Positions 47,901 to 63,658 of a DNA stretch of 64,000 bases are shown piece by piece (position 1 is the stretch's first letter; every line of letters begins with the position of its first letter). The translations under genes and the position numbers were made by a program. The notes below the pieces were generated by a model. It did no database searches and was not told the origin of the DNA. It saw nothing but the letters and a program-made list of their open reading frames with translations. This DNA comes from Lytechinus pictus (taxonomy: Eukaryota): positions 54,932,001-54,996,000 of the forward strand of contig NC_087249.1 in NCBI RefSeq assembly GCF_037042905.1. Reading direction: 5' to 3'.

Positions 47901-50900
47901 TCCAATTGTTCTTTTGTATTTTATTATATGAAATTAGGCTTATTCAAAAATTTTCTACCAAGAACTAAAACAATTTGATTGACAACTGATTAAATGCATT
48001 AGTTATTTACTGCCGCAGCTTATTTCATCATAATGGAGAAACATCATTTACACATGCATGAAACAATGAAACATTCATGATTTCATGTAATAACATAAGA
48101 ATATGGAAAGTGGGGATGTGACATCATCAGCCCACCTAATGAATATTCATGACGATGTGCATATGACCGTTTTCACAAAATATTGATAATCTTTAAAATT
48201 CAATAACTTTGTTATTTGTTATCCGATTTTGATGAAATTTTCAGCATTTTTCTCTGTGAATCTTACTCTATTTATTTAGATATAAATATTTTCAGCCTGG
48301 ACCATCCCTTTAATACACTGTTCCACATATGCCTTTTTGTGTTATTTATTGTCAGAATTACCGGTTTTCAGCTAAGATTTCATGATTTCACAAAGATGAG
48401 TTGATTTCAATGTACCAGATCTAGGTCTATGATAATATTGTGGTAATTTACCTTGATTTTATAGGCTTCTTAAATGAAATAATTGTTTGCCAGCACAATT
48501 ACTTTCTTTTACCTTTAAGAGCGACTTTAAGAAGGACTGGTGAACCTTTCTTACGCACTAAAATAATCATCAATGAACATTTAATGGTTCTTAAAGTCAC
48601 TCTTAAAGGTCAAGTCCACCCCTGAAAAATGTTGATTGAGATAAATAGAGAAAAATCAAATTAGCAAAAGTTTCGCTTCTTTTTCACAAAACAGTGATAT
48701 GCACAACTCAGTGACATGTAAATGAGACAGTCGATGATGTCCCTGATCACTATTTCTTTTGTTTTTTATTGTTTGAATTATACAATATTTCATTTTTTAC
48801 AGATTTGGCAATAAGGACCAACTTTTTCGAACCATATACATGTAGTATTTAAAAAATGCTAATTCCACTATTTCACTTGACAATGAGGAGAAAATTAGAA
48901 TATTCCATATTTCATACCATAAAATACAAAATGAATAGTGAGTGGATGATGTCATCGGTCTCCTCATTTGCATACCGACCAGGATGTGCATAACTGTTTT
49001 GTGAAATTATGCGGAACTTTAAAATGTCATAGCTTTCTTATTTTACATCCGATTTTGATGAAATTTCCAGTGTTATGCTTGTTGGATTTTTCTCTTTTTA
49101 TTCAAATCAAATTTTTGTTGGGGTGGACTTGTCCTTTAACTTATGAACAACTTTATGAAACAGCCCCCAGTGAACTATTATTGGTTATGGCGTGGCTGGT
49201 CATGAATGTAACATTAAAAAAAACCAAAATTGGATAGTTGACCAACTGGAAGGTGTAGGACGGCTGTTACTAATCCTATGTGTGATTTCAAATTCATTTA
49301 TTTCACATTTCTTAAAAACAGGGAACAATACATAGTGAATTAATGCAATAAAATGAAAACAATGACAGTTGTAAAATTTAGACCAAAAAAAATAACAAGA
49401 AACACAAAGTAATGAATGGGATGTGAGGGAGTAACAAAAAGCCAATGGCGTATCTAGGCTACTCCCTTTTCAGGGGCCGCGGAACGGTTTTCAAAGTGGG
49501 GGGGGCTGAGCCAAAAGTTGGGGGGCTGACCATGCAAAAAATCACAATCATATGGTCATTTTTTGTTTTTGTACACGGTTTTGGAGAAAAGTTGGGGGCT
49601 GAAGCCCCCCCCCCCCCCCCCCGCTTCCGCGGCCCCTGCTTTTTACATTCATTACTGATAATAAAACAAAACAATATCTTTCAATCAACTTTTGAGATTG
49701 AAAAAAAATCAAAAACAAAGATCTCAAAATCAAACCAAATCAGTAGACTGGTGAAACGAAACAAGAACAATTAAAAGCAAAAAAAGTAAAAAACAAAACA
49801 TAGAACATAACAGGCAAGCTTATTCATTGAGTAGTATGATTATTTAACAGGTATGATTCACATTTTCTTTTAAACGAAGTTAAAGAAGGACATATAAAAT
49901 AACCGTCAAATGTTTCAGGCAACTTATTCATGTAGTATGAAAACATAAAACATGCAGTTTGGAGGGTGTGTATATCATGAATTTTTAAGATCTTTAACTT
50001 ACAGAATTTAATGTTGAAATCTATATATATTTTTTGGTCTTTATCAGCTGTTTGGCAATGGTATCCTATGCAGTACATTATCTGTTAGACCTAGCAATGC
50101 CGAGGGATATGAGTTTGCTGGTGAGGATCATTTCAGTCCTACCTGTCTGGAGAATAGTCAAGGGATTCTATTAGCTGACAGTGGTAGATTGGTCTTCAAC
50201 TCTTCTGGTCTAGCGGGCAAGAAGGAATTCTACAAGTAAGAGGGGCTACATCATATATTCTACTCAAACACCATTGTACTCAGAGCTGCCAATAAGAAAG
50301 ATTTTATCCTCTTTAGTAGGATGTTTGAGGGGAAAGTGACACTAAATAGGATTTGAAACAATGATTTTTGGTATGTTTTTCCAAATTTTAAAGAAAAATA
50401 GGATTTTATATTGAAAATAGAATAAAAGGAAATTAAGAATAGGTCTTTTTTCACAATTTAGTTTGGCAGCTGTGTTATACTTGAAAATTTTCATGTAACA
50501 TCATTATAAAATAGTAATTTTCATTCCAGCTATCAGTACTTAAATATGCAAAGCACCAAGTCTCTTTCTACAAAACTTCCTTTTTATTTGTCTCCCCTAA
50601 ATAATTAACAAGGTCTAATTACAGATCTATTTGCTTAATGTTACTACATCTAGAAATCTTTGAACCCATTGCTCCAAGATCATTTTGTGTCGGTTGGAAT
50701 TCCTCAAATATGATTTTGGAAAGCTTATGCTTTGTGTTATAATCCTTTTTATTTCATTATTTGATTATCCCCTCATTTTTGTCTCGCCTGCATAGCAGAG
50801 CGAGACTATAGGCGCCGCTTTTCCGACGGCGGCGGCGTCAACATCGAATCTTAACCTAAGGTTAAGTTTTTGAAATGACATCATAACTTAGAAAGTATAT

Positions 50901-53900
50901 GGACCTAGTTCATGAAACTTGGACATAAGGTTAATCAAGTATTAGTGAACATCCTGCCTGAGTTTCAGGTCACATGACCAAGGTCAAAGGTCATTTAGGG
51001 TCAATGAACTTTGGCCAAGTTGGGGGTAGTTGTTGTATTACCATCATAACTTTGAAAATTTATGGATTTAGTTCATGAAACTTGGACATTAGGTTAATCA
51101 AGTACCACTGAATATCCTGTGCGAGTTTCAGGTCACATGACCATGGTCAATGGTCATTTAAGGTCAATGAACTTTGGCTGTGTTGGGGGTATATGTTAAA
51201 TTATTTTTATTTCGTTATTTGATTATACTTTTGTCTCCCCTCATTTTTGTCTCGCCTGCATAGCAGAGCGAGACTATAGGCGCCGCTTTTCCGACGGCGG
51301 CGGCGGCGGCGTCAACATCAAATCTTAACCTAAGGTTAAGTTTTTGAAATGACATCATAACTTAGAAAGTATATGGACCTAGTTCATGAAACTTGGGCAT
51401 AAGGTTAATCAAGTATTAGTGAACATCCTGCTCGAGTTTCAGGTCACGTGACCAAGGTCCAAGGTCATTAGGGTCAATGAACTTTGGTCAAGTTGGGGGT
51501 ATTTGTTGAATTACTATCATAACTTTAAAAATTTATGGATCTAGTCCATGAAACTTGGACATAAGGTTAATCAAGTATTAGTGAACATCCTGCCTGAGTT
51601 TCAGGTCACATGACCAAGGTCAAAGGTCATTTAGGGTCAATGAACTTTGGCCAAGTTGGGGGTATTTGTTGAATTACCATCATAACTTTGAAAATTTATG
51701 GATTTAGTTCATGAAACTTGGACATTAGGTTAATCAAGTACCACTGAATATCTTGAGCGAGTTTCAGGTCACATGACCATGGTCAATGGTCATTTGAGGT
51801 CAATGAACTTTGGCCGTGTTGGGGGTATATGTTAAATTACCATCCTAGCTCTGAAAGTTTATGGATCTAGTTCATAAAACTTGGACATAAGAGTAATCAA
51901 GTATCACTGAACATCCTGTACGAGTTTCAGGTCACATGACCATGGTCAAAGGTCATTAAAGTTCAATGAACTTTGGCCGTGTTGGGGGTATTTGTTGAAT
52001 TACCATCCTAACTTTGAAAGTTTATGGATAGAGTGAATGAAATGTGGACATGGGTGTAGTTGACAGTCTTAAGTCTCCGTTCAAATGTCATTTATGGTCA
52101 ATGAACGTGGTATTATGTCATTATATGAATGATATTTTTGTGAATGATTATTTTATAGTAGTTTTCAAAGTTAGCACTGCTGCTATATTAAATTGCGTAA
52201 TGTAGGCGAGACTGCCAGAGGCGTTCCACTTGTTTAATTTGTATCTTCATTTTATTGATAAAATAGGAATAATTGTAGACTTCAGTTAATTGTTATTTAA
52301 TCCTTTTTAAATATTCATTTTGTTTATTATAAAAGAGACATAAAATTTATGTAATTTTGATCAGATTTGTAAATTGCTAAAATGAGACTATGGTCCATGT
52401 TGCGTCAAAGATACATGTACTATTATGGCATGCTTTTGCATCCATTGATAACTAATGGTAACAATGCTCAACAGCCAATCAAAATCAAGGATACTAGTAA
52501 CAATTAGTAATAAGTAACATTCATGAAACAGGGTCTTGATGTGTCCTGTAGTGCATTGTATGTTTATACAGTACCGTTTCTGTATCTTTTCAGTGCTCTT
52601 CTTGACACCCCCGGTGTAGACCCCAAACTGTTGAAAGAAGACTGGGTCTATAATCATTACAAGTGGATCATCTGGAAAGCAGCTGCCATGGAAGTAGCTT
52701 ATCCTCTTCAGTTTGGTGGGAGGTAAGAATTCAGGCTACCTGCCTTACTCAATATTGATGTTATCAACTGATTGCAAGCTGTGGTCCATGGCTAACCATT
52801 TTCTACTCTTCTTCTTTTCTGTCATTTTTATGCCGCTGCCAAAAATATTTTAAAGGGGCTATAATCACCGTAATGTCGGTTGGGCGGGTGGTCCGTTGCA
52901 AATCTTGAGGTTCAAACTACTTCCTCAGTTTTTATCCGATTCTCATGAAGCTTGGAACACACTTGGGGTAAAGTTGTGTGAGACACATTTTTTGCATACA
53001 TGTGTCAGAAACTGTGTTGCCATGGTAATGGTATAGGGCTAGGGTATTAATCACCTTAGGTGATATTTATAGACAAATTCACCCATATCTGATTATTCAA
53101 ATTGTGGCCAAATGAACCTTAACAATAATAATAGGTGGGAAGCACAAATGAAAGTCTTAAAAGTTGTTGGCACTGACCAAATTTATTAGCTCTGAAAATC
53201 TCAGTGAATCCCTTTGATTTGATTGGCTGAGCACCACTTGTCCCTTCCTGTTACCATGGTAATTTTCAGTGCCTACAGACTTCATAAAAAGGGTGACAAA
53301 GGGAGAATACTTTGATTTGCTGTGACACAGAGGTGTCTGACTGTTGTTATGGTAACTGTCATATAAACAGACTTTCTAATAAGTCATCTGGAAAATCCTT
53401 TCATGAAACACTGCTGGGGTTGAATATACCAGATTAAGCATTTTTAGGTTGAATCATATATGTTAGAACTCTGATTTTAATATATTTTTCTCCTTTTTAT
53501 ATGCTTTTCTTCTTTTATTACAGACTATTGACACCAAATTGGGTGCTTCTTCAGTTAAAGTATCGGTATGATAGAGAGATAGATCACAGTCAACGCCCTG
53601 CTCTTAGGAAGATCTTAGAACGAGACGATGCAGCATCCAGGAGAATAGTCCTCTGTGTAGCAGCTATTAATCACACGGGATCATCAACACATCATCATGG
53701 GAAATCACCACAACAATTAAAGGTGATTCTAATGATTGGTTCACATGGATGCCACAGCCACTTAGAACAGTGTCATCTCAAAAACCTGTCCTGTTTCATA
53801 CAGACTTGTTATTATAAGAAATATTCAATTGCTGTTACAAATTTTATATCAAGCAATCAGATTGAAGGATTTCATTAGCATTTAACTATTATTGCAATTT

Positions 53901-56900
53901 TTTTATTATAACAAGTTTTGTTAAATGAGCCCATGAACTATTAAAGTGACATTGCAGGTCGAGGGTCTGTATGTTTGATCATTCAGCTCAAAACAAGAAT
54001 ACCAGTTCTTTGGTGCTTTATTAACAGACTATTCAATATCACTTTGAGACAGTTCTCTACATAATTCAAATTCACAATGAGAACTTTACTTTTTCTTTAA
54101 AAGATTTAGATATTGTGACTTAAAGAAAGTAATCTGAAAATTCTTTTGAATTGATTAGGAAAAGGAAATTGAATGTGTTTTAGTAATTCTTATTTTCTTT
54201 CCTGTTTTTCTTTAGAGTTCACAGCCCTTATCGCATCCTACTCTAGAGCTGACGGATGGATGGCACAGTATATCAACTATCATAGACCCACCCCTAGCAA
54301 ACTATGTAAGGTCTGGAAAGATCTTATGTGGTACCAAGCTGTGTATATATGGAGCAGAGTTGATTGGATCTCAAGATGCTTGTTCTCCTCTTGAGGTTGG
54401 TACTGTAATTCAACTTTTATTTCTAGATTTTCCTACTTTTAGACAATTTATATGCAAAATGTTCAGGATCTCTTTGCTTAGCCTCATTCTAAGAAACTAA
54501 CTGGTAACGCTGCCTTGAATGATAATAACGCTGAATAGATTGAAAGTTAACGTAGTAATTACCATTGAAACCAAAGTTATTGTTGATGGGAAGTTTTATG
54601 AAATGGCACCTAGAAATGAATATCCATTTACATTAGCTCCTCTCCCCTTGGATTAGTATAATGAGACAGTCTCTACATTGTATATATACCACATTGACTT
54701 GCTCGAATACTCCCCAATTAGTAGAAATATATTCACCAAGTAATGAACAGGGTTATCTCTTTTTTAGGTGCTTGGCAAGTTTTTCTCATTCTTGGACTGT
54801 ATACATATCATTACTTCCACTGTATTAGTACAGATGAACCTCCCCTTCTCACTCTCTTGCTATCTACTTTACTTCATATAATGTAGTTTGAGCTGAGCCT
54901 TTGAAAGGTTAATGGCCTCTGCTGGCTCCCCCCACATTATTTTTATTAATTACTTATTTTCTTTAATGTATATTTCTGTAAATGTAATCATTTATTATCA
55001 AATTGGAAATAAAGAAAATAATTCCTCGAAAATCATGCACATTTTGATTCTAGATTCCAGAAAGTCTGAAACTGAAGATAGCGGCCAATTCTACCAGACG
55101 TGCACGCTTTGATGCAAGACTTGGTCTCCAATGTGACCCCCGACCTTTCCCCCTCCCTACGACCTCTCTGCATCCTGATGGTGGTAGTGTAGGGTGTATA
55201 GATGTTCTCATCCTTAGGACATACCCCATGCAGGTAAGATTGATATTGTATTGCATGGCTCAGAATGGGATACCAGAAATATTCCCCAAGTTAGGAATTA
55301 TTACACAAAATGTAGATGAGTGCAATATTGGCATTACAAATCAAATATTTAATCTTTATAGTAAAAGCCATCCAATATATTTATTATTTCAAGTTTTCTT
55401 AATGATCATTTTCCATTAGACTTTATAATACGGCATGATATTGCAAAGCAAGTTTTGTACATTCACATTTCGGTGCTATGTGTAATATGATCTGATATTG
55501 CACAGTACAGACGAATTATGAAGACTGAAATGTTATCGAAATCAGACGTAAAATAAGAAGTTACAATATTTAAGAAATTTTGCGTATTTTCCACAACAGT
55601 GTATTCTGTAATATAAGGATGTATTGTAATCTAATGTTTAGTTCATGGAGAAACTCCCAGAGGGGGAAGTGTGTTCAGTATACTGTAATGATGGTATAAT
55701 AATGTTTGTTTCTTAATGTTTAGTTCATGGAGAAACCCATAGAGGGGGGAAGTGTGTTCCGCATACTATAATGATGGTATAATAATGTTTAGTTCATGGA
55801 GAAACTCCCAGAGGGGGGGGGGAGTGTGTTCCGAATACTTTAATGATGGTATAATAATGTTTAGTTCATGGAGAAACTCCCAGAGGGGGGGAAGTGTATT
55901 CCGCATACTGTAATGATGGTATAATAATGTTTAGTTCATGGAGAAATTCCCAGAGGGGGGAAGTGTGTCCAGTATACTGTAATGATGGTATAATAATGTT
56001 TGTACGTTAATGTTTAGTTCATGGAGAAACTCCCAGAGGGGGGAAGTGTGTTCCGAATACTGTAATGATGGTATAATAATGTTTAGTTCATGGAGAAACT
56101 CCCAGAGGGGGGAAGTGTGTCCAGTATACTGTAATGATGGTATAATAATGTTTGTACGTTAATGTTTAGTTCATGGAGAAACTCCCAGAGGGGGGGAAGT
56201 GTGTTCCGAATACTTTAATGATGGTATAATAATGTTTAGTTCATGGAGAAACTCCCAGAGGGGGGGAAGTGTGTTCCGCATACTTTAATGATGGTATAAT
56301 AATGTTTAGTTCATGGAGAAATTCCCAGAGGGGGGAAGTGTGTCCAGTATACTGTAATGATGGTATAATAATGTTTGTACGTTAATGTTTAGTTCATGGA
56401 GAAACTCCCAGAGGGGGGAAGTGTGTTCCGTAATGCCAAGGAAGAAGCTAAAGCTGCTACTCTTCATGCCAGTCAGAAACAAAACAAGATGGAGCAACTC
56501 TTTACACAGGTCCAGAAGCAGTTTGAAGCAAAGCAATCTCATAAAGGTATTCAATTCTATCAGTTCTGGGTGAAATCAGATGTCTGTGGCTAATAATAAT
56601 TATTATACCGACATGCTTATACAGCGCATATCACTGCCAAATGCGTCCCTGTGCACTCTTTGAAGAAGACAGAAAAAGCAAAGAAAAGAGAGAAATTTGC
56701 TGGCGATCGTGGCACTAACTCATTTGAAATTCTTTTTGAATAAGTATGTTTTCAAAGTGGATTTAAACTTGGGTGTAGAAGAGTTCTTTGCATATGAGGG
56801 GATGGTATTCCAAAGTGAAAAGGCATTATGTATTTCTGTAGAAATATTATCACTCATGAAGAAAGCAGACTTCCTTGTTTATGCTACATTTGAAAAATGG

Positions 56901-59900
56901 CCCAAATAATAGCCCAAGTATGTCTGTGTGATAAATGTTGTTTGTGTCAGAAAGTAAGTAAAGTAGTCAAAATTTTTCATTAAATCTCAAATGCTTACAT
57001 ATCGTTAAATACCAATTGTAGTTTTGATTGAAGTCCTCAAAACAGTTTATTAATATACTTTTTATTTCTAAAATGATCACAAGAAGGACAAAAACGAAAC
57101 TTAGATACAGTGATTGTTTTCCTAATCTAGCTAATTTATAATCATAGCAACAAACAACATATTTTGAATTCATATTTCCTGATGTACAATCAACCTGTTT
57201 AGAAATGTTGCCAGTGGAGTCAGGTGACCTGTATAGACAGGGTCTAGGACACATATTCCTTTAATCCTAAAAAAAGGCAAGTTATTTGGACCCCTCTCAC
57301 AGCCAGGGGGGGGGATTCTGCCCCCTGAGTTCTCGGCCTTTGATCGCACAAGCGCCGCAAAAATTTGCAAAGTGGTAGTGTGCGATAAAATCTACAAGGC
57401 TGTATGGTTAATTTTTTTAAATACGATTTTTCATTTAATGGATCAATTATGCTAATTTATGCATAAAATAAAACATTTGCTGTAATCAACTATCATACTG
57501 CCCCAAAACTGCTAATTTTTTTATTCACAGACTCTTTGTAGGATCCTGATCAAATGTACTTCAAAAAAAATTTGGTATCGCAATTTTTGATGTCTTTAAT
57601 TGTTTTTATATGCCCGTCCTAGACGGGACGTATTATGGTATCACGCTTGGTGTCCGTCCGTCTGTCTGTCTGTCCGTCCGTTAACTTTTCCTTGTAAAGG
57701 TGATAACTTCAGTTTAACTTAACCTAGGCTCATATAATTTGGTGTGTATAATACTAGCATAGATCCCAGGAAGCCTATTGATTTTTAGGTCAAAAGGTCA
57801 AAGGTCAAGGTCACAGTGACATATTTTCATGTTACCCTTCTGCAGTCGTTGTAAATGCGATAACTTCAGTTTAACTTAAACTAGGCTCATATAATTTGGG
57901 GTGTATGATACTAGCATGGATTCCAGGAAGCCTATTGATTTTGAGGACCAAAGGTCAAGGTCACAGTGACATGTTTTTATCTTACCCTTCTGCAGTCGTT
58001 GTAAACGCGATAACTTCAGTTTAACTTAAACTAGGCTCATATAATTTGATATGTATAATACTAGCATGGATTCCAGGAAGCCTATTGATTTTGGGGTCAA
58101 AAGGTCAAGATCACAGTGACATGTTTTCATCTTACCCTTCTGCAGTCGTTGTAAACGCGATAACTTCAGTTTAACTTAAACTAGGCTCATATAATTTGGT
58201 ATGTATAATACTAGCATGGATCCCAGGAAGCCTATTGATTTTGGGGTCAAAAGGTCAAAGGTCAAGATCACAGTGACATGTTTTCATCTTACCCTTTTGA
58301 AGTCCTTGTTAACGCGATAACATTTATTTATTTATTTATTGGTTTTATTTATTTTATACTGCAGGGTAGGCCTGTTCAGTTATGCAAAACTGCTTTCCAA
58401 AGGCGCCCTGCAGTTAAACAAATAATTCAATATCATAGAAAATCAATGTATGTACCATATGATATAGTAAAAACAGAAAAGATTGTATACATATAGAGTG
58501 AAATCAACAATTACTCATGGAATCATTACATTTACATCAAGTTATTCATTGTAATAACATGTACGACAGTCAGAATTTTAATGATTTACAGTGTTTTTTA
58601 AATGCATGGAGGGATGTGCATTTTTGTATATCACAAGGGAGAGAATTAAATACAACGGCAGCAACATATTCAAAAGATTTTCTTTTAGTTGAACTTAACC
58701 TAGGCTCATATAATTTGGTGTGTATACTAGCATAGATCCTAGCAATTCTATCGATTTTGAGGCCAGAAGGTCAAAGGTGAAGTCGCCATCTTCCACTTTT
58801 CTTGCTTGACCAATAGGTCCATTTTCCGCGGCGTTACAGACGGGCGTATTATGTGCTCGCCTTAGCGACACTCTTGTTTTAATTTCTTAATATGTATTTC
58901 TTTGTTTTTCTACTTTTTATTAATTTTTTTTTTCGATGGAAATTGTTGCAGACTTAATTCTGATCATAAACAAGACAAAATTTATTAAGTTTAATCAGTA
59001 AAAGTAGAAATAATGATACATTTATGAATTGTGGCTAAATACACAATTTGCATCGGATTTGTACATGAATTCATGTTTTTTTTTTCCAATTTCTTTTTCA
59101 CCCACAGTAGGGTGTTTTATTCAATAAACCTTCAGTTTACATGTACATTTGCTTTCACAGTCAATGTGGTTCCAGTCTACATTTGTTTTCACAGTCAATG
59201 TACAGAAATAATCAGATAGTGAGTGTTGAACAGTAGTACAACAATTCATGTTTTTTAGCAGTTTTGGGTCTGACATGCACTTACATAATGTTGCGTAATT
59301 TTGTAACCGCGTACCCGGGCATCGCAAATTTGGCCTCAAAAGTTGTGCGAGATTTGAAAGTTAAACGTCAGCAAGCGGCACGGTGGAAAAAATTTTCACG
59401 GCGGATTTATCGTGAAAAATTTAAAAGGGTTAAAAAGCAAGCCAAATATTGGTGGCCACTAAAGACATGTTTTCAAAATAGACAAATGGCTGCTACATGT
59501 ACAACAGGTTTGACTGTATTTGAATGTCTGTGAAAAATGTGAAATAATGATGCATGTATCATTAAAACAAATATATGTATCTAATAACTTTATATATCAC
59601 TACTAGTATCTTACTACCGGTTTATCAATTTATATTTCCATTCATCCACCAATCTATCTATCTCTATCTATCTATCTATCTATCTGTCTGTCTCTGTCTT
59701 TCTGCCTACCTATCTGTCTGTCTTCCTATCTGTCTGTCTGTCTGTCTCTTTGTCTATCTTTCTAAGTAGTCAAAGGTAGAAGGTCATTGCCATCATCTAG
59801 GAGTAGAAACCCATCTGATTTGGAGAGACTGCAATCAGGGGAAGAACTATTTGAAGCTTTAGAGGCAGCTATTGACCCTTCTGCTTTTGAGGTTAGTCTG

Positions 59901-62900
59901 ATCAGAACCCTGGTTCTATGATTTGTTGCATAGTTGTTACAAACTCAATTGTATAAATCAACTGTACCATTAATCATTAATTTAGTACTAAGGTGGCATT
60001 GCCACAACACACTATTAAATGTAATTTATGTGTGTAATAGTTGTGTTATTTGAGTAATTGTGTAGGATCTGTTCCAGGCATTGAAAAGAGTTACATGTAT
60101 ACATGTACAGGAGAATGAGATACATGTAGGTTATGAGGTTTTTTCTTCTTTATTTGAGAAGAAAATCAACTCTGATTCCAAGCTGGCACTAGCAAAAACA
60201 GAAACAAAAATCAAAAATATTAGTGAAGGTCCACTAAAAATCCACCAAAAGTAGCTGAATTTTTTTTACATCTCCAAATTGACGGCTTGATATTTGCATA
60301 CTAGTCTAGGTCATTTTAATCATAAATAGCCATGATATTGTATTTCTATGTGAGAGTTTTTTTCAGGCTTTCACCTTCCTGTTTTTCTGCTTTAATACAA
60401 ATAATTATATTACCAAGGTTGCCTTCCTCATTAAATGAAATCTGTGATCGGGCTCTACATTTAAATAAAGAAACCTTAAAGTCATTAAACTTGTCTGACA
60501 TCCCTTCTAGATTTTATCAAACAGCTTCTCATACCTTGTTATTTATAAGTTTGCAAACAATATCCTCATTACCCAAATGAGTCTATAGAATTATCTGAAG
60601 ACATAAAACAGATTGCTTATGTGAGGATGATGTGGAGGTTGCACAGGATATGTTTCCCCCATACCTTATGTTCTGGTTTTAGATGGGGTTGTGACACAAG
60701 TGTTAGATATAGTCCTGCTTGATAGGTCTAGAGGGTACCGGTCCAGCATGTGAAAGTAAATGGATTTCTCGATCCGATCCAGAAGACCATCTTGCTATGT
60801 GGTCTTGTGTTATGATTCACATTTACATGTAGATCACTGCAGACTCTCATATTATACAGGCTATGCTTTTGAGTGAATCCACCATTTCCACAGATTTCAA
60901 TGAAATTTATGTATCATAAATTGTCTACCAAAAATATTCCATGTTGTGTAAATGCATATGTTGATTATCACAACAACATATGAAATTAATTTGTATTATT
61001 CTTAATGTTCTGTTGGAAATAAAATCAAATTTGAATACAATTTTTCTTGGGGGGGCGGGGTGTTCCGAAACTAAACTTAAGAGAAGCTATAAAGCCAGGT
61101 TTCGCTGTATCTTCCTTCCTTCCTTCTATCTTTCGTTTAATTATTTATATCTTTATTTTCTAGTCTGATCTGAGTGAATACCAACGTTGTATCCTTCATG
61201 CCTACCAGAGATCAGTCAATGATATGAAACAAGCTAACCTACAAGCAGCATTCAATCAAGCCCTCACTCAACAAAACAAAGAGGTAAAACTAAGTAGCAC
61301 TTACATAAACAAACTCTCTGAAATTGTGAATCGCTTAAACATCGGTCACATTTGCTCTACGGCGGCCGTACGGTGAGTCTAAAACAGCTGTTTTAACATT
61401 TTTTTTGTACCAGCTACATATTCATGATATGGGTGGTTTGAATAAGAATGAATAAAACGGCTGTTTTCTACTCGCCGTACGGCCGCCATAGAGTAAATGT
61501 GACCAAGGTATTAGGACCACACAAACTTTAATGTTAGATAAACGAAACATGATTGGGTGATTCCACGCTCTCGTTGTTTAAATTCACAACCTTATGGTTT
61601 TTGGTATTCAGCTATTTGTTAGCTAGTCGTTTCAATAATGTCTGTGTTGTAGTCTGTCTTGACACATTCATGCCTTCGTAGCAATGTCCTTTCCATAAGA
61701 GATTTGCCCATTAGAATTTCACAATTTATTTTTCTTTTGGAATTTGTATTTTAATTGAAATTTAATTTTTTCCATCATCTTACTCTCTTTCTCTCTCTTT
61801 CCCTTTCTACTTCCATCTTCTCTCTGCCTTTCTTTATCTCTCTTTCCTGCACTCTTTAACTTGTTTCATGTTTGTCTCTTGTGACCTTGTTCCCTATCTC
61901 CTCCTACTTTATTTCTGTATCTTGTCTCTCTTGTTCTTTGTTCTATATGTCTCCTATTCCCTGTCTCACTCTTCTCTTCTTTCTCCCTGTCTCTCTATCC
62001 TCTTTCTCATGCTCCCTTTCACCCACACTCACCATCTCTCCATACTTCAGGGTAAGTTTGAAAGAAATGTAGTTCCTCTCATGAAGGTTCGTGTGGCAGA
62101 CTACAAAGCTTCCACCACCAGGGGGCAGCAGACCACTTTCCTGACCATATGGCGACCTGCAGATGATCTGTTATGCCAGCTTGTTGAAGGGAAACGATTC
62201 AGGATATCATCCTTATCTACCTCAGCAGGAAGGTAATTGCTTTTAAGGTTTAAACTAATATTGTGGATTCATAATGAGGTAAACTATATGTAAGAAAGTC
62301 AAGTTATATTGAGTCAAACTAAGGTAACTGTAGTGCTTCATATTCTATTAAACTAAGGCAAATGGTTTGTATTGAGTTTATCTAAGGTAATTGTATATTG
62401 ATTTACATGTAGACTAAAGTAGCTGCTTGGTCTTGACTTGAAGTAAGGTAATTGCTTTGTATTTGATTAAAGTATGGTAATTCCTTTAATTTTCATAACA
62501 GTCAAGAAAGTTTTAAGATATTATGGTGTTTCAAAAATTATAAGAGGAACCCTCTTATGAAGTGAATGTTCAAAGAAAAGCTGAACATTTTTCATAAACA
62601 TCAAAGCAAAATTGATGGATATCCTTGACATGTTGACATGGTTGTCATTCTGTAAAGTTTACTTTTTATCAAGTTATACATATATATATATTTTCACTGA
62701 AATAGTGAGAAGGAAATGTATTTCTTATATATTTTTTGTTGCGCCTCCCTCATAAAACCAGAGGACGGAGACCTTTTAATTTTGTTGATTGCGTAGGTAC
62801 ATAATTTGCTACATGATTTACCAACTCTTGTGTCATATCCCGAAGCCTGGTGTACCATTGTTGATTCATTCTCGGATGCGTCCGATTTTACAGTGTAGTC

Positions 62901-63658
62901 ATATATATATGGTACATGTATATATATTCTTAAAAGTATTTTAAAATATAACTCATCTCCTTCCCCCTCTTCACAGGAACATGCCTGATATGGCACCAGT
63001 TCAGCTAGCCTCCACCAGAGCCACTCGATATGAAGAAATACCTGCAGCTAGCCACATCCTACAGAGAAGCTATATACCCCGGGCAGCTGCTTCAATGCAG
63101 TGGCTGGGAAGAGGCTATACACAAGCAGCGTACGGTGAACTAGATGTTGTAGGAGTAGTTGTGTCACAGGATGAACCTAGGTAAGCTTGGGATGAATGCT
63201 GCATAGGTAAAGGCTTAATGCAATATCTGTGACATAGTTAATTGGCCAAAGAAACTCTTTCTTTGAGAAGCAAGTATATTATCACAGAAGTTGCATTGCA
63301 AATATAAAACTGCATTTTAATTATGTTTGAAGAGAACCAAGATAGCAATTCTAATTATCTTTTTTTTAATGATTTCCACTGTACCTCTGAAACAAGTTGA
63401 CATTTCCTTTTTAAGAAAACACTTATCTATCAATTTGTTACCTCAAAATAAGTTGTGCATTGTATTAAAAATCACTGAGAGACGGATTTAATTCTGTATA
63501 TAAGCTCTGTAATATACATAATGGTATTACATGTTGATTTTCAAATTTCTTCTCCTTATCTAAGCAGGCAGCATCTAGGCAGTTCTCACTCTCATGTAGT
63601 TTATCTAGCTGATCAGGATACAGCTATCATGGCTATCAAATTCTGGACCAGTCCTGCG
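2847..63658 (+). CDS. BRCA2: BRCA2 ortholog, spliced gene span (22 coding exons, >=3646 aa, 3' end beyond window)
   Basis: Hand-assembled exon chain with canonical GT-AG sites and matching phases, total 10,938 nt divisible by 3. Contains BRC repeats and DNA-binding-domain hallmarks ([46 protein letters not shown]). Confidence 0.97.
3530..3684 (+). CDS. BRCA2: BRCA2 coding exon 2, PALB2-binding motif ([10 protein letters not shown])
   Basis: tttcag acceptor, GTGAGA donor; resembles human LGPISLNWFEEL. Confidence 0.85.
4242..5006. mobile_element. Foldback MITE (possibly PIF/Harbinger-like)
   Basis: TIR ggg..gtattctgaaaattgtcttaa / ttaagacaatttttagaatac..ccc; CTG flanks on both sides. Confidence 0.7.
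5265..5442 (+). CDS. BRCA2: BRCA2 coding exon 3 (DILKTPQ...IFSTPGLF...)
   Basis: ctag acceptor, GTGAGA donor, open frame, phases 0/1; resembles human LFKTPQ...STPIIF. Confidence 0.85.
6330..7525 (-). mobile_element. Decayed non-LTR retrotransposon (LINE, CR1/L2-group-like) RT fragment
   Basis: Minus-strand [21 protein letters not shown] (GVPQGSxLGP motif) and KYVDDTT (YxDD), with frameshifts; boundaries approximate. Confidence 0.8.
7999..8258 (+). CDS. BRCA2: BRCA2 coding exon 4
   Basis: Open frame (ORF 7962) with TP-rich motifs (LFKTPS, CSTP); phases 1/0 fit both neighbours; GTACGT donor; aag acceptor is weaker. Confidence 0.75.
9523..9681 (+). CDS. BRCA2: BRCA2 coding exon 5 ([29 protein letters not shown])
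   Basis: Strong match to conserved human [22 protein letters not shown]; cag/GTGAGT boundaries. Confidence 0.92.
9761..11068 (+). mobile_element. HINE/Tsp/pearl-like non-autonomous element, family B, 6 x ~155-bp internal repeats
   Basis: 5' T-run + gtctcgcccac hairpin + (GTCC)n microsatellite, tandem units, 3' inverted copy gtgggcgagg and ...cttgtt end. Confidence 0.85.
10298..10443. mobile_element. MITE with 5-bp TSD (AAGTT), nested in the family B element
   Basis: TIR caggggccgcggaac / gttccgtggcccctg; the empty site is visible in neighbouring repeat units. Confidence 0.9.
11594..13250 (+). CDS. BRCA2: BRCA2 coding exon 6 (large, low-complexity)
   Basis: 1657-nt open frame (ORF 11630), cag acceptor, GTAAGT donor, phases 0/1. 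Confidence 0.88.
13452..14162 (+). mobile_element. HINE-like family A, copy 1
   Basis: 5' gtctcacctgca...gtgagac hairpin, (GGC)n tract, ~3 internal units, 3' tgcaggtgagac...cacttgtt. Confidence 0.88.
14372..15927 (-). mobile_element. SINE (tRNA head lost), split by family A copy 2
   Basis: (AAT)n tail + ggcatttatatagcgc at left, body ggtaccca...cacctgggt at 15775-15927; homologous to the SINE at 40053. Confidence 0.7.
14448..15774 (+). mobile_element. HINE-like family A, copy 2 (~7 units, ~163-bp period)
   Basis: Same termini as copy 1, with G/C variant of the inverted repeats. Confidence 0.9.
15949..16690. mobile_element. piggyBac-type MITE
   Basis: TTAA at 15945 and 16691; TIR ccctttagcacct / aggtgctataggg (1 mismatch). 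Confidence 0.85.
17142..23354 (+). CDS. BRCA2: BRCA2 coding exon 7, giant BRC-repeat exon (6213 nt; human exon 11 equivalent)
   Basis: ORF 17120 of 2080 aa with ~25 F-x-x-[AG]-x-G...VS...L.KA...L/F motifs; cccag acceptor, GTAAGT donor. Confidence 0.96.
21305..22783 (+). repeat. Coding tandem array: 13 x ~114-bp (38-aa) BRC units ([27 protein letters not shown]...)
   Basis: Period of 114 bp visible directly (21305, 21419, ...); one unit is 111 bp; a degenerate 14th unit follows. Confidence 0.95.
24026..24598. mobile_element. TTAA-flanked MITE (Kolobok-type), copy 1
   Basis: ttaa-aggtcaagtccac ... gtggacttgtcct-ttaa; homologous copy at 48607. Confidence 0.85.
24715..25114. mobile_element. Palindromic MITE
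   Basis: Long inverted arms ggcccgaattcac...ggtggttttt / aaaaaccacc...gaattcgggcc. Confidence 0.8.
25305..25376 (+). CDS. BRCA2: BRCA2 coding exon 8 (PPRRVNEK...SNPT)
   Basis: tttcag/GTTAGT, 72 nt, phases 1/1, open frame. Confidence 0.7.
25696..25852. mobile_element. Short MITE with CAG flanks, carrying X-box-like and CCAAT motifs
   Basis: TIR gggagcgtttcat / atgaaatgctccc; homologous copy at 38131. Confidence 0.8.
26758..26818 (+). CDS. BRCA2: BRCA2 coding exon 9 ([11 protein letters not shown]...)
   Basis: tttttag/GTAAGA, phases 1/2 bridge the neighbouring exons; loosely like human GTIKDRR. Confidence 0.7.
27454..27652 (+). CDS. BRCA2: BRCA2 coding exon 10 (...[16 protein letters not shown])
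   Basis: TAGTAG tandem acceptor (start 27454 or 27457), GTATGA donor; matches human NARDIQDMRIKKK. Confidence 0.85.
27779..28227 (+). repeat. Minisatellite, 6 x 75-77 bp, embedded in a decayed minus-strand SINE (~27690-28395)
   Basis: Unit atttcaatctaatttttctgcacacagtgtatacgcactctccgttcctaggggagtattccagccagtt...; SINE-like gggtggagagtggcaaa and gggattcaaa downstream. Confidence 0.9.
29575..29693. repeat. Long hairpin (~53-bp arms), probably the end of an unclassified mobile element (~28970-29710)
   Basis: gtgcga.cgttccgaatattgca...ctattcaac / gttgaatag...tgcaatattcggaacg.tcgcac. Confidence 0.7.
31675..31894. mobile_element. CACTG-ended MITE (CACTA/EnSpm-like), 2-bp TG TSD
   Basis: Perfect TIR cactgcaaaaactctgg / ccagagtttttgcagtg; internal aacacca repeats. 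Confidence 0.85.
33785..34379. mobile_element. TTAA-flanked MITE (Kolobok-type)
   Basis: ttaa-agaggaatccagcc ... ggttggattctcct-ttaa. Confidence 0.75.
34924..35102. mobile_element. hAT-type MITE
   Basis: caggcgcggatc ... gatccgccagtg with 8-bp TSD tctcagat/tctcatat (1 mismatch). Confidence 0.75.
36932..37048 (+). CDS. BRCA2: BRCA2 coding exon 11 ([12 protein letters not shown]...RISLKDFV...)
   Basis: Matches human PQPGSLY...RISLKAAVGGQVP; acag/GTAAGA. Confidence 0.9.
38131..38287. mobile_element. Second copy of the X-box/CCAAT MITE
   Basis: Close homology to 25696-25852; CAG flanks. Confidence 0.8.
38380..40054 (-). mobile_element. HINE-like family D element (~1.67 kb), inserted in the (AAT)n tail of a SINE
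   Basis: Subterminal IR ttaggtgatctgtc (38412) / gacagatcacctaa (40041), terminal hairpin tgatctgtc-gatt-gacagatca, and a minus-strand 3' end ...CTAGTT. Confidence 0.8.
38720..38790 (-). other. tRNA-like Pol III cassette (A box, B box, downstream T-run); not a foldable tRNA
   Basis: Minus strand cagctcgattggtaaggc...ggttcgaagcc followed ~12 nt later by T7; acceptor and anticodon stems do not pair. Confidence 0.6.
40053..40350 (-). mobile_element. Full-length tRNA-derived SINE
   Basis: Minus strand ggaagcgccgtggtgtagcgg (A box) ... gttcgaatcc (B box), conserved body and (TTA)n tail. Confidence 0.88.
43285..47005. mobile_element. Complex rearranged DNA-transposon remnant with subterminal TCACGGACGGAC motifs
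   Basis: Motif repeated in both orientations (43296, 43475, 43690, 44957, 46400, 46612, 46801, 46985), with internal direct and inverted duplications; boundaries approximate. Confidence 0.55.
44980..45946 (+). mobile_element. HINE-like family A, copy 3 (4-5 units)
   Basis: Same termini as copy 1 (A/T variant). Confidence 0.9.
47706..48309. mobile_element. TTAA-flanked palindromic MITE (Kolobok-type)
   Basis: ttaa-agggatggtccaggctg ... cagcctggaccatccct-ttaa, perfect TIR plus internal IRs. Confidence 0.9.
48607..49135. mobile_element. TTAA-flanked MITE (Kolobok-type), copy 2 of the 24026 family
   Basis: Same TIRs and body as 24026-24598. Confidence 0.85.
49471..49638. mobile_element. MITE with 5-bp TSD (CTTTT), inverted copy of the 10298 family
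   Basis: TIR caggggccgcggaa / ttccgcggcccctg. Confidence 0.9.
50048..50235 (+). CDS. BRCA2: BRCA2 coding exon 12, helical domain (LFGNG...GILLADSG...AGKKEFY)
   Basis: Matches human [24 protein letters not shown]; 188 nt; cag/GTAAGA. Confidence 0.93.
50776..51202 (+). mobile_element. HINE-like family A, copy 4 (3'-truncated, 2 units)
   Basis: Intact 5' end; breaks off and is followed by a repeat of its own upstream flank. Confidence 0.85.
51244..52234 (+). mobile_element. HINE-like family A, copy 5 (near-identical to copy 2)
   Basis: Same diagnostic unit variants in the same order as 14448-15774. Confidence 0.9.
52594..52722 (+). CDS. BRCA2: BRCA2 coding exon 13 ([13 protein letters not shown]...NHYKWIIWK)
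   Basis: Hallmark helical-domain motif; ttttcag/GTAAGA. Confidence 0.96.
53524..53722 (+). CDS. BRCA2: BRCA2 coding exon 14 ([14 protein letters not shown]...LRKILERDD)
   Basis: Hallmark helical/OB1 motif; tacag/GTGATT. Confidence 0.95.
54216..54395 (+). CDS. BRCA2: BRCA2 coding exon 15, OB1 (LELTDGWH...[15 protein letters not shown])
   Basis: Matches human IELTDGWY...GAELVGSPDACTPLE; tttag/GTTGGT. Confidence 0.95.
55054..55233 (+). CDS. BRCA2: BRCA2 coding exon 16 ([12 protein letters not shown]...[10 protein letters not shown]...YPMQ)
   Basis: Matches human LKISANSTRPARW...DGGNVGCVDVIIQRAYPIQ; ctag/GTAAGA. Confidence 0.95.
55630..56430 (+). repeat. Tandem array of 11 copies (10 intronic + the real one) of the intron end and first ~35 nt of coding exon 17
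   Basis: Unit taatgtttAG-TTCATGGAGAAACTCCCAGAG(G)nAAGTGTG...tactgtaatgatggtataa; unit lengths ~69-72 and ~82-83 bp. Confidence 0.95.
56393..56546 (+). CDS. BRCA2: BRCA2 coding exon 17, OB2/tower ([20 protein letters not shown]...)
   Basis: Matches human [22 protein letters not shown]; only the last array copy reads through; GTATTC donor, phase 1. Confidence 0.92.
57265..59429. mobile_element. Possible old TTAA-flanked element hosting family C
   Basis: ttaa-tcct... and ...aggg-ttaa ends; weak TIR; some similarity to window positions ~140-180. Confidence 0.35.
57605..58879 (+). mobile_element. HINE-like family C (5 x ~150-bp units, last one interrupted by a ~58323-58685 minus-strand LINE-tail-like insert)
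   Basis: 5' atgcccgtc-cta-gacggg hairpin, (GTCC/GTCT)n, 3' gacgggcgt IR + hairpin + cttgtt end. Confidence 0.85.
59653..59762 (+). repeat. (TCTA)n/(TCTG)n compound microsatellite abutting the exon 18 acceptor
   Basis: Directly visible. Confidence 0.9.
59770..59891 (+). CDS. BRCA2: BRCA2 coding exon 18 (...[21 protein letters not shown])
   Basis: Matches human [27 protein letters not shown] tandem acceptor (59767 or 59770); GTTAGT donor. Confidence 0.92.
61164..61283 (+). CDS. BRCA2: BRCA2 coding exon 19 ([15 protein letters not shown]...NDMKQANLQ)
   Basis: Matches human [25 protein letters not shown]; ctag/GTAAAA. Confidence 0.9.
61338..61512. mobile_element. Short palindromic MITE
   Basis: ggtcacatttgctctacggcggccgtacgg / ccgtacggccgccatagagtaaatgtgacc. 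Confidence 0.8.
62051..62232 (+). CDS. BRCA2: BRCA2 coding exon 20 ([11 protein letters not shown]...LTIWRP...EGKRFRI)
   Basis: Matches human RDVTTVWKLRI...[22 protein letters not shown]; ttcag/GTAATT. Confidence 0.93.
62977..63180 (+). CDS. BRCA2: BRCA2 coding exon 21 ([11 protein letters not shown]...YIPR...[10 protein letters not shown])
   Basis: Matches human IQLAATKKTQY...YQPR...EVDLIGFVVS; acag/GTAAGC. Confidence 0.92.
63568..63658 (+). CDS. BRCA2: BRCA2 coding exon 22, OB3 ([17 protein letters not shown])
   Basis: Matches human VYLSDECYNLLAIKFW; cag/GTGAGT. Confidence 0.9.

What the first reader, a model, noticed from the sequence alone, without database searches (positions are those of the whole stretch)
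55630..56430. Ten tandem decoy copies of a BRCA2 splice acceptor plus exon start, directly ahead of the real acceptor
Seen: the junction taatgtttAG|TTCATGGAGAAACTCCCAGAGGG...AAGTGTG (FMEKLPEG...) occurs 11 times, with AG at ~55640, 55722, 55791, 55863, 55933, 56016, 56085, 56168, 56238, 56308 and 56391. Only the last copy continues into the conserved tower-domain exon. The upstream copies I translated (6-G and 7-G types) hit a TAA within ~15-20 codons. Copies 6 and 8 have essentially the same ~45 nt of upstream sequence as the real site, and copy 1 has the best-looking branch point (CTAAT). Inference: the spliceosome must skip 10 near-identical acceptors in an essential gene, probably via exon definition from the 56547 donor. 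Otherwise the array acts as a copy-number-tunable source of NMD-targeted or DBD-truncated BRCA2 transcripts.
Basis: partly seen in the sequence, partly recalled or inferred. Interest (0 to 1): 0.85.

Follow-up and report, generated by a model that had tools for sequence, protein, structure and literature searches.

The report
Repeated decoy splice acceptors in BRCA2
In the sea urchin Lytechinus pictus, the junction between a BRCA2 intron and the next exon has been copied ten times in a row, making ten look-alike splice sites that the cell appears to ignore; it is a neat natural test of splice-site choice but probably has no function of its own.

Summary
There are 11 copies of ...ttag|TTCATGGAGAAA..., with the acceptor G at 55641, 55723, 55792, 55864, 55934, 56017, 56086, 56169, 56239, 56309 and 56392. 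The units are 69-83 nt and show higher-order periods of 152, 223 and 375 nt. The array occurs nowhere else in the 811-Mb genome.

The gene is BRCA2 of Lytechinus pictus. The last copy starts the Tower-domain exon (56393-56546), and all ten upstream copies reach a stop within 15-24 codons.

A 5.7-kb spliced RNA contig from the window's own species joins 55233 to 56393, the last copy. Eight RNA-like runs hold only the exon words.

L. variegatus has 3 decoys at the same place. Strongylocentrotus purpuratus and Diadema have none.

Only decoys 2, 6 and 8 match or exceed the real acceptor's score. Six others lost a 14-nt pyrimidine-rich piece and score like background AGs.

Best reading: a young, expanding minisatellite that straddles the intron-exon boundary. 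It is the acceptor-side mirror of the human F7 IVS7 minisatellite. The exon-proximal copy is probably chosen by exon definition, which is inferred and not shown.

I found no evidence for a tunable NMD switch, but RNA depth was low and NMD would hide such transcripts.

The parts
55054..55233 (+). BRCA2 exon equivalent to human exon 17 (end of OB1; ...[19 protein letters not shown]). It is phase 0 and its donor is CAG|GTAAGA.
   Evidence: Translation. tblastn with hemichordate and amphioxus BRCA2. RNA contig piece 55052-55231 with 0 mismatches. Donor PWM score 12.5 bits, 89th percentile.
55236..55387 (.). Copy of a dispersed repeat of about 155 nt (transposon-like) that fills the 5' part of the intron. 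L. variegatus shares it.
   Evidence: At least 687 candidate copies genome-wide, and the scored ones match query positions 1-154 at 76-79%. Very high k-mer depth at 55244-55304. It aligns with L007:55701-55865.
55388..55641 (+). 254-nt intron segment present in L. pictus and absent in L. variegatus. Its last ~48 nt resemble the unit tails and, more weakly, the S. purpuratus intron end. Decoy 1 therefore probably keeps the native upstream intron.
   Evidence: Alignment A1. Pairwise tests against shuffles: 0/500 versus the unit tail and 7/500 versus the S. purpuratus tail.
55642..56392 (+). The array: ten tandem units. Each unit is the first 34-38 nt of the exon followed by about 31-48 nt of intron tail ending in ttag. 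Long units (82-83 nt): 1, 5, 7, 10. Short units (69-72 nt): 2, 3, 4, 6, 8, 9. Higher-order repeat: units 3-4-5 correspond to units 8-9-10.
55642..55723 (+). Unit 1 (82 nt, long type, G5 run). The decoy acceptor before it scores 0.7 bits. It is orthologous to the first L. variegatus unit (2 substitutions, no gaps).
55724..55792 (+). Unit 2 (69 nt, short type). The decoy acceptor before it is the strongest in the array, 5.1 bits, above the real one.
55793..55864 (+). Unit 3 (72 nt, short type, G10 run). The decoy acceptor before it scores -2.6 bits, at background level.
55865..55934 (+). Unit 4 (70 nt, short type). The decoy acceptor before it scores -1.9 bits.
55935..56017 (+). Unit 5 (83 nt, long type), identical to unit 10. 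The decoy acceptor before it scores -2.6 bits.
56018..56086 (+). Unit 6 (69 nt, short type). The decoy acceptor before it is a perfect replica of the real site from -107 to +38 and scores 2.9 bits.
56087..56169 (+). Unit 7 (83 nt, long type). The decoy acceptor before it scores -2.6 bits.
56170..56239 (+). Unit 8 (70 nt, short type). The decoy acceptor before it is identical to the real site from -70 to +26 and scores 2.9 bits.
56240..56309 (+). Unit 9 (70 nt, short type). The decoy acceptor before it scores -1.9 bits.
56310..56392 (+). Unit 10 (83 nt, long type). The decoy acceptor before it scores -1.9 bits. The long tail of this unit supplies the pyrimidine tract and AG (56391-56392) of the real acceptor.
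56393..56546 (+). Real exon (start of human exon 18 equivalent; [22 protein letters not shown]..., Tower domain), 154 nt. Its acceptor scores 2.9 bits (13th percentile) and its donor AAG|GTATTC scores 4.3 bits (13th percentile).
   Evidence: Pfam PF09121 E=1.1e-14. tblastn alignments start exactly at 56393. RNA contig piece 56391-56546 with 0 mismatches, joined to exon 17. PWM scores.
56440..56447 (+). Purine-rich GGAAGAAG, 48 nt into the real exon and absent from every decoy unit. It is a candidate exonic splicing enhancer (inferred only).
   Evidence: Sequence. GAA-repeat enhancers are established knowledge and were not tested here.

Best explanation
This is a young, lineage-specific minisatellite that straddles an intron-exon boundary of BRCA2 in the sea-urchin genus Lytechinus. 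An ~80-nt piece, made of the last ~45 nt of the intron and the first ~36 nt of the Tower-domain exon, was duplicated in tandem before L. pictus and L. variegatus split. It then expanded by unequal exchange or replication slippage, to 3 extra copies in the L. variegatus assembly and 10 in L. pictus. The L. pictus expansion included a recent three-unit higher-order duplication. In any tandem duplication only the last copy stays joined to the rest of the exon, so the earlier copies became intron. Each earlier copy carries a pseudo-acceptor that would give a premature stop if used. The spliceosome uses the last, exon-proximal copy. The likely reason (inferred) is exon definition. Only the last copy is followed by the rest of the exon, with a GAA-rich enhancer-like element 48 nt in and a 5' splice site 154 nt away. 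Together these would recruit U2AF/U2 to the nearest upstream acceptor. Six of the ten decoys are further disabled by a 14-nt deletion that removes most of their pyrimidine tract. The array itself most likely has no function. It is tolerated because the correct junction survives intact and rare mis-splicing would be removed by NMD.
For: Shown directly:
- The array, its coordinates and its higher-order structure, and its uniqueness in the genome.
- BRCA2 identity, with the last copy as the orthologous exon start.
- Premature stops after every decoy.
- A 5731-nt contig from a run of the window's species (0 mismatches in both exons, depth 28) joins 55233|56393 across a 1159-nt GT..AG gap.
- No RNA depth over 55488-56341 in three RNA runs.
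- Eight RNA-like runs from two studies hold 0.23 and 0.17 of the sampled words. The exons-only expectation is 0.24 and 0.18.
- L. variegatus has 3 decoys plus the real site, and its NCBI gene model uses the last copy.
- An independent DNA run of the L. variegatus-like organism holds a unit-junction contig at k-mer depth 424 against about 57 for single-copy sequence.
- S. purpuratus and Diadema setosum have a single acceptor and no exon-start copies in the intron.
- L. pictus unit 1 differs from L. variegatus unit 1 by 2 substitutions. L. pictus units 5 and 10 are identical, units 3 and 8 differ by 1 substitution, and units 4 and 9 by 2.
- PWM scores for the acceptors.
- BRCA2 internal exons have a median of about 180 nt and introns about 840-1010 nt, an architecture typical of exon definition.
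- A donor-side precedent exists in the human F7 IVS7 minisatellite (PMC1557585).
Against: - RNA evidence is thin. It rests on one assembled contig, and contigs drop rare isoforms.
- The single junction read in run X31 has only 23 nt on its shorter side and may not tell the copies apart.
- Raw-read depth over the exons was only about 1-5.
- Decoy-spliced transcripts would be NMD targets, so they would be under-represented.
- Exon definition, the enhancer and the branch points are inferred, not tested.
- My PWM rests on only 45 acceptors from one gene in two species.
- No L. pictus DNA run was available, so the copy number of 10 is not independently confirmed.
- The real acceptor and donor are both weak (13th percentile), and decoy 2 scores higher than the real site. 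Clean bypass therefore cannot be taken for granted.
Confidence: 0.72

Rival explanations
1. Leaky decoys: the strong decoys (2, 6, 8) are used in an appreciable fraction of transcripts. These transcripts are destroyed by NMD, so the array is a non-adaptive drain on BRCA2 output that standard RNA-seq does not show.
For: Decoy 6 is identical to the real site from -107 to +38. Decoy 2 scores higher than the real site. The real acceptor and donor are both weak. All decoy products carry early stops. RNA depth was low.
Against: No array-containing contig or read in three RNA runs. Word shares in eight runs equal the exons-only expectation. BRCA2 is retained with an intact DNA-binding domain in both Lytechinus species.
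Confidence: 0.14
2. Regulatory device: the array is a selected, copy-number-tunable switch that diverts BRCA2 transcripts into NMD or DBD-less products in some tissues or stages.
For: Only the formal possibility: ten acceptors that all lead to premature stops, and copy number that differs between species, 3 versus 10.
Against: No alternative isoform was detected. The array is not conserved: it is absent in S. purpuratus and Diadema. Units evolve like a neutral minisatellite, with G-run slippage, a 14-nt deletion and higher-order duplication. Most added copies are weakened acceptors, which is the opposite of what a decoy device would need.
Confidence: 0.05
3. Assembly artefact: the array, or its copy number, was created or inflated by the assembler.
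For: No L. pictus DNA run was available to confirm 10 copies. Tandem arrays are sometimes mis-sized.
Against: Units differ from each other in an ordered higher-order pattern. An independent assembly of L. variegatus has the array at the same place. An independent DNA run holds a unit-junction contig at about 7 times single-copy depth.
Confidence: 0.04
4. Splicing helper: the ten G5-G10 runs of the array, now intronic, act as intronic splicing enhancers that prop up the weak real acceptor.
For: Each unit carries a G5-G10 run, and the real acceptor is weak. That G-runs can act as intronic enhancers in vertebrates is established knowledge, not tested here.
Against: No test was possible. S. purpuratus manages with no array. 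In Lytechinus the acceptor is weaker than the S. purpuratus one, so the array looks like the cause of the weakness and not its remedy.
Confidence: 0.05

Closest known systems
Human F7 (coagulation factor VII) IVS7 37-bp VNTR minisatellite (Borensztajn et al. 2006, PMC1557585)
   Same: A minisatellite whose terminal unit contains an authentic exon-intron junction of an essential gene, so the transcript carries 5-9 identical splice sites in tandem. Only the exon-proximal one is used and the others are silent pseudo-sites.
   Different: F7 repeats the donor (5' splice site) and the used copy is the first. Here the acceptor (3' splice site, with branch-point region and pyrimidine tract) is repeated and the used copy is the last. 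The units are 69-83 nt versus 37 nt. The F7 pseudo-sites were shown experimentally to be functional; these were not tested. Polymorphism is documented for F7 and only hinted at here.
Engineered tandem duplications of donor or acceptor sites in globin genes, as summarised in PMC1557585, which cites pioneering studies with opposite outcomes
   Same: Identical acceptors compete in cis, and the outcome depends on position and on how much exon follows each copy.
   Different: Those were two-copy artificial constructs. One set reported use of the copy proximal to the partner site. Here a natural 11-copy series uses the copy farthest from the donor and adjacent to the full exon.
Intronization after tandem duplication, and intron sliding (Lehmann et al. 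2010, PMC2891723; potato RdRp case, PMC4974935)
   Same: A regional tandem duplication that includes coding sequence and a splice signal, with one copy of the duplicated exon sequence becoming intron.
   Different: Those cases create or move an intron. Here the intron position is unchanged, and the intron has simply grown by 751 nt of former exon-plus-intron copies.
NAGNAG tandem acceptors
   Same: More than one usable AG sits at an intron end.
   Different: NAGNAG sites are 3 nt apart, share one branch point and tract, and give in-frame isoforms. Here the copies are 69-83 nt apart, each has its own upstream signals, and all give premature stops.

Membership tests
BRCA2 gene (context) | BRC repeats plus a DNA-binding domain with a Tower insertion | tested here: met
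   Pfam BRCA2 repeat, 23 stretches, E=4e-223. Tower PF09121 E=1.1e-14 on 56393-56545. Helical, OB and Tower exons mapped by tblastn. The large exon is 100% identical to an L. pictus protein.
Splice-junction-spanning minisatellite (F7 IVS7 type) | Tandem array of 10-100-bp units inside an intron | tested here: met
   TRF finds periods 69 and 83 over 55632-56430; ten units of 69-83 nt.
Splice-junction-spanning minisatellite (F7 IVS7 type) | The terminal unit contains the authentic junction, so every unit carries a copy of the splice site | tested here: met
   All 11 copies have ttag|TTCATGGAGAAA. The last continues into the conserved exon. This is on the acceptor side, not the donor side as in F7.
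Splice-junction-spanning minisatellite (F7 IVS7 type) | Only the exon-proximal copy is used physiologically | tested here: met
   A spliced contig joins 55233|56393. There is no RNA over the array, and word shares equal exons-only. Depth is limited and minor use is not excluded.
Splice-junction-spanning minisatellite (F7 IVS7 type) | Copy number varies among individuals (VNTR) | tested here: inconclusive
   10 copies in L. pictus versus 3 in the L. variegatus assembly. A unit-junction contig in another L. variegatus-like sample lies at about 7 times single-copy depth. No within-species genotyping was possible.
Splice-junction-spanning minisatellite (F7 IVS7 type) | Pseudo-sites are functional when the authentic site is removed | not testable with these tools
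   Needs minigene or genome-edit experiments. In silico, decoys 2, 6 and 8 score at or above the real site, and six others score at background.
Regulated unproductive splicing (poison exon / AS-NMD) | An alternative isoform with a premature stop is actually produced | tested here: not met
   Stops are predicted, but no decoy-spliced or array-containing RNA was found. The caveat is low depth with NMD active.
Regulated unproductive splicing (poison exon / AS-NMD) | The element is conserved across related species | tested here: not met
   Absent in S. purpuratus and Diadema setosum. Copy number and unit types differ between the two Lytechinus species.
NAGNAG tandem acceptors | Two AGs 3 nt apart at one intron end | tested here: not met
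   The spacing between acceptors is 69-83 nt.
Recursive splice sites (ratchet points) | Acceptor AG immediately followed by a reconstituted donor GT(A/G)AGT | tested here: not met
   Every AG is followed by TTCATG. The best donor-like site in a unit is GAA|GTGTGT, 28 nt downstream.
Structured RNA or embedded small RNA gene | Match to an RNA family, or folding better than shuffled sequence | tested here: not met
   No Rfam match at E<=1 in 55000-57000. Folding z-score is +0.95, with 17 of 20 shuffles folding at least as well.

The most novel reading that the evidence does not exclude
The array is more than junk. Its strong decoys (2, 6, 8) may capture a copy-number-dependent share of BRCA2 pre-mRNA for NMD, or become used when splicing factors are limiting. 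BRCA2 dosage in Lytechinus would then be set by a rapidly mutating minisatellite. That would be a heritable, tunable and species-specific control on homologous-recombination capacity.
Probability: 0.06. Interest if true: 0.75.

Novelty: new variant of a known kind. Interest (0 to 1): 0.42.

Why it matters
Natural arrays of identical splice sites are rare and useful, because they separate the strength of a site from its position. The human F7 minisatellite has served this purpose for donors. I found no acceptor-side counterpart in the searchable literature.

Here three decoys are as good as or better than the real acceptor. One is a perfect copy over 145 nt. The cell still appears to pick the copy next to the full exon. 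That argues against simple 5'-to-3' scanning or first-come-first-served choice of acceptors, and in favour of exon-side information.

L. pictus is a laboratory sea urchin with accessible eggs and embryos. L. variegatus offers a natural 3-copy comparison and S. purpuratus a 0-copy one, so the question is directly testable.

For BRCA2 biology the array is most likely a harmless curiosity.

Tried and rejected
- Dispersed-repeat origin of the unit: rejected. A whole-genome search finds the unit only at this locus.
- Masking of decoys by RNA structure: no support. The fold z-score is +0.95.
- Embedded RNA gene: no Rfam match.
- Recursive-splice or NAGNAG readings: the sequence does not fit.
- Micro-exon use of the units: each unit has a donor-like GAA|GTGTGT (5.8 bits) 28 nt in and a weaker ATG|GTATAA (1.2 bits) 52 nt in. 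No RNA supports their use.
- Run X22 (raw rRNA-depleted RNA) gave no junction reads and only about 1x depth over exon 18. The single junction read of X31 has 23 nt on its short side and may not discriminate between copies.
- Homology of the S. purpuratus intron tail with the unit tail is not significant (97/500 shuffles). It is only modest with the L. pictus pre-array tail (7/500). I therefore do not claim a specific microhomology at the original duplication junction.
- Look-ups of the L. pictus model P0001 and the Patiria model P0127 found no record.
- No L. pictus protein model containing the DNA-binding domain appeared in the length range searched.
- A literature search for a remembered HEXB junction duplication found nothing usable, so I do not cite it.
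- No paper mentions BRCA2 together with Lytechinus.
Full report
**1. What is in the sequence**

Between 55632 and 56430 the window holds a tandem array. Tandem Repeats Finder reports periods of 69 and 83 nt and higher-order periods of 152, 223 and 375 nt.

An exact scan finds ttag|TTCATGGAGAAA eleven times. The exon-like starts are at 55642, 55724, 55793, 55865, 55935, 56018, 56087, 56170, 56240, 56310 and 56393. The window has no N. A search of the whole 811-Mb genome with a 152-nt double unit matches only this locus.

**2. The gene**

- The large ORF 17120-23362 has 23 Pfam BRCA2 repeats. It is 100% identical to a protein named for Lytechinus pictus.
- The stretch 56393-56545 translates to [18 protein letters not shown]... 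and matches Pfam Tower at E=1.1e-14.
- The upstream exon 55054-55233 ends ...RTYPMQ in phase 0.
- tblastn with hemichordate and amphioxus BRCA2 maps the DNA-binding-domain exons along the window. Its alignment begins exactly at 56393.
- YPMQ|FMEK is conserved in the BRCA2 proteins of L. variegatus, S. purpuratus, Diadema and starfish.

The eleventh copy is therefore the authentic acceptor. The RNA contig and the donor scan put the exon end at 56546, with the intron starting at 56547. Reading from any of the ten upstream copies gives a stop after 15-24 codons.

**3. Anatomy of the units**

Each unit is the first 34-38 nt of the exon, followed by an A/T-rich tail that ends in the acceptor. There are two types.

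- Long units (82-83 nt): 1, 5, 7 and 10.
- Short units (69-72 nt): 2, 3, 4, 6, 8 and 9. These lack 14 nt of T-rich sequence just before the acceptor.

The G-run varies from 5 to 10. Units 3-4-5 and 8-9-10 form a recent three-unit duplication: units 5 and 10 are identical, units 3 and 8 differ by one substitution, and units 4 and 9 by two.

An acceptor's upstream signals come from the preceding unit. Only copies 2, 6, 8 and 11 (the real one) therefore follow a long tail.

**4. Splice-site strength**

I built a position weight matrix from 45 BRCA2 acceptors of L. variegatus and S. purpuratus, whose exons I mapped exactly from their proteins. It is small and gene-specific.

| Site | Score (bits) | Note |
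|---|---|---|
| Real acceptor | 2.9 | 13th percentile |
| Decoys 6 and 8 | 2.9 | same as real |
| Decoy 2 | 5.1 | above real |
| Decoy 1 | 0.7 | |
| The six decoys after short units | -1.9 to -2.6 | |
| Median intronic AG | -2.9 | background |
| S. purpuratus orthologous acceptor | 7.4 | |

Decoy 6 equals the real site from -107 to +38, and decoy 8 from -70 to +26. The real donor AAG|GTATTC is also weak at 4.3 bits, the 13th percentile. Each unit has a donor-like GAA|GTGTGT (5.8 bits) 28 nt in.

**5. RNA evidence**

I had one read-laying run.

- In run X4 a 5731-nt contig of depth 28 covers 55052-55231 and 56391-56546 with no mismatch. It joins them across a 1159-nt GT..AG gap, that is 55233|56393. 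This is spliced RNA of the window's own species using the last copy.
- None of the three RNA runs shows any depth between 55488 and 56341. Raw-read depth on the exons was only about 1-5.
- The lone junction read in X31 has 23 nt on its shorter side and may not distinguish copies.
- As an indirect check, eight RNA-like runs of the same coded organism, from two studies, hold 0.23 and 0.17 of the sampled words for my two queries. The share expected if only spliced exons 17 and 18 are present is 0.24 and 0.18.

Contigs drop rare variants and NMD would remove decoy-spliced RNA. Low-level use is therefore not excluded.

**6. Relatives**

I fetched the BRCA2 loci of L. variegatus (L007), S. purpuratus (L008) and Diadema setosum (L009).

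- L. variegatus has the same arrangement with three decoys, at exon-like starts 55866, 55948 and 56030, plus the real site at 56112. All its units are long. Its NCBI model uses the last copy.
- Its 411-nt intron consists only of a shared dispersed repeat of about 155 nt plus the units. L. pictus has 254 extra nt between the repeat and the array.
- L. pictus unit 1 differs from L. variegatus unit 1 by two substitutions and no gaps. At least one duplication therefore predates the species split. The short units and the higher-order duplication are L. pictus-specific.
- S. purpuratus has one acceptor with a good pyrimidine tract and no copy of the exon start in its 765-nt intron. Diadema likewise has none.
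- The coded organism A of the read runs carries the 11-nt insertion and the repeat-to-unit junction seen in L007. It is therefore L. variegatus or very close to it.
- In that organism's DNA run an 87-nt unit-junction contig has k-mer depth 424, against about 57 for neighbouring single-copy sequence. This independently shows a multi-copy array and hints at more copies than the three in the assembly.

**7. Mechanism**

Shown: the array exists, it is lineage-specific and still changing, and the last copy is the one spliced.

Inferred: the array began as a tandem duplication across the intron-exon boundary and grew by unequal exchange or slippage. Only the last copy stays attached to the rest of the exon, so the other copies were intronized.

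The choice of the last copy is best explained by exon definition.
- BRCA2 internal exons have a median of about 180 nt, with introns of about 840-1010 nt.
- Only the last copy is followed by the exon remainder, which includes GGAAGAAG at 56440-56447, and by a donor 154 nt away.
- For decoys 6 and 8 nothing differs from the real site within about 100 nt except what lies beyond +26 or +38.

RNA structure does not explain the choice: z = +0.95. No RNA family matches the region.

**8. Comparison with known systems**

The closest described case is the human F7 intron 7 minisatellite. Its first 37-bp unit spans the exon 7-intron junction, so that 5-9 identical donors follow each other, and only the exon-proximal one is used (PMC1557585).

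The present array is the acceptor-side mirror image. It has a longer unit because an acceptor needs a branch-point region and a pyrimidine tract.

The array also fits the idea of intronization after tandem duplication (PMC2891723; PMC4974935). It is not a NAGNAG site, a recursive splice site or a conserved poison exon; the membership table gives the tests.

Searches of the held literature found no natural acceptor array of this kind, and no paper that mentions BRCA2 together with Lytechinus. The library is incomplete, so this is not proof of novelty.

**9. Verdict**

The array is most likely a neutral or slightly costly minisatellite, and a useful natural experiment on acceptor choice. It is not a regulatory device. 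I rate it a new variant of a known kind, of moderate interest.

Noticed in passing
window 55236-55387: A dispersed repeat of about 155 nt, with at least 687 candidate copies in the genome, begins within a few bases of the exon 17 donor. L. variegatus shares it. In L. variegatus this repeat plus the decoy units make up the entire intron.
   Followed up: partly
window 56586-56710: A second high-copy dispersed repeat lies just downstream of the exon 18 donor. Its k-mer depth reaches about 98,000 in a DNA run, and many RNA reads from other loci run on into unlike sequence there.
   Followed up: no
window ~1-24000 (protein P0001): The only L. pictus protein model found for this gene (3071 aa, 'uncharacterized protein LOC135154073 isoform X1') has BRC repeats. 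It stops at the start of the helical domain and lacks the OB and Tower domains. The window nevertheless encodes those exons (50045-63163), and a spliced RNA contig covers exons 17-18. This is probably a truncated isoform or model ahead of the ~22-26-kb intron.
   Followed up: partly
window 55388-55641 versus L007:55865-55866: A 254-nt indel separates the two Lytechinus species. Its edges share TTCA. In L. variegatus the first decoy acceptor AG is formed at the end of the dispersed repeat (tatttattag|TTCATGGAAAAA).
   Followed up: partly
window 17120-23362: Pfam finds 23 BRC-repeat stretches in the single large exon, far more than the eight of vertebrate BRCA2. The S. purpuratus and L. variegatus proteins are also very long (4305 and 3985 aa).
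   Followed up: no
window 55992 and 56005 (run X1): The unit-junction contig of the L. variegatus-like DNA sample differs from the L007 assembly at one position (A>G at window 55992). Its depth suggests about 7 units rather than 3, so the array may vary in length and sequence within L. variegatus.
   Followed up: no
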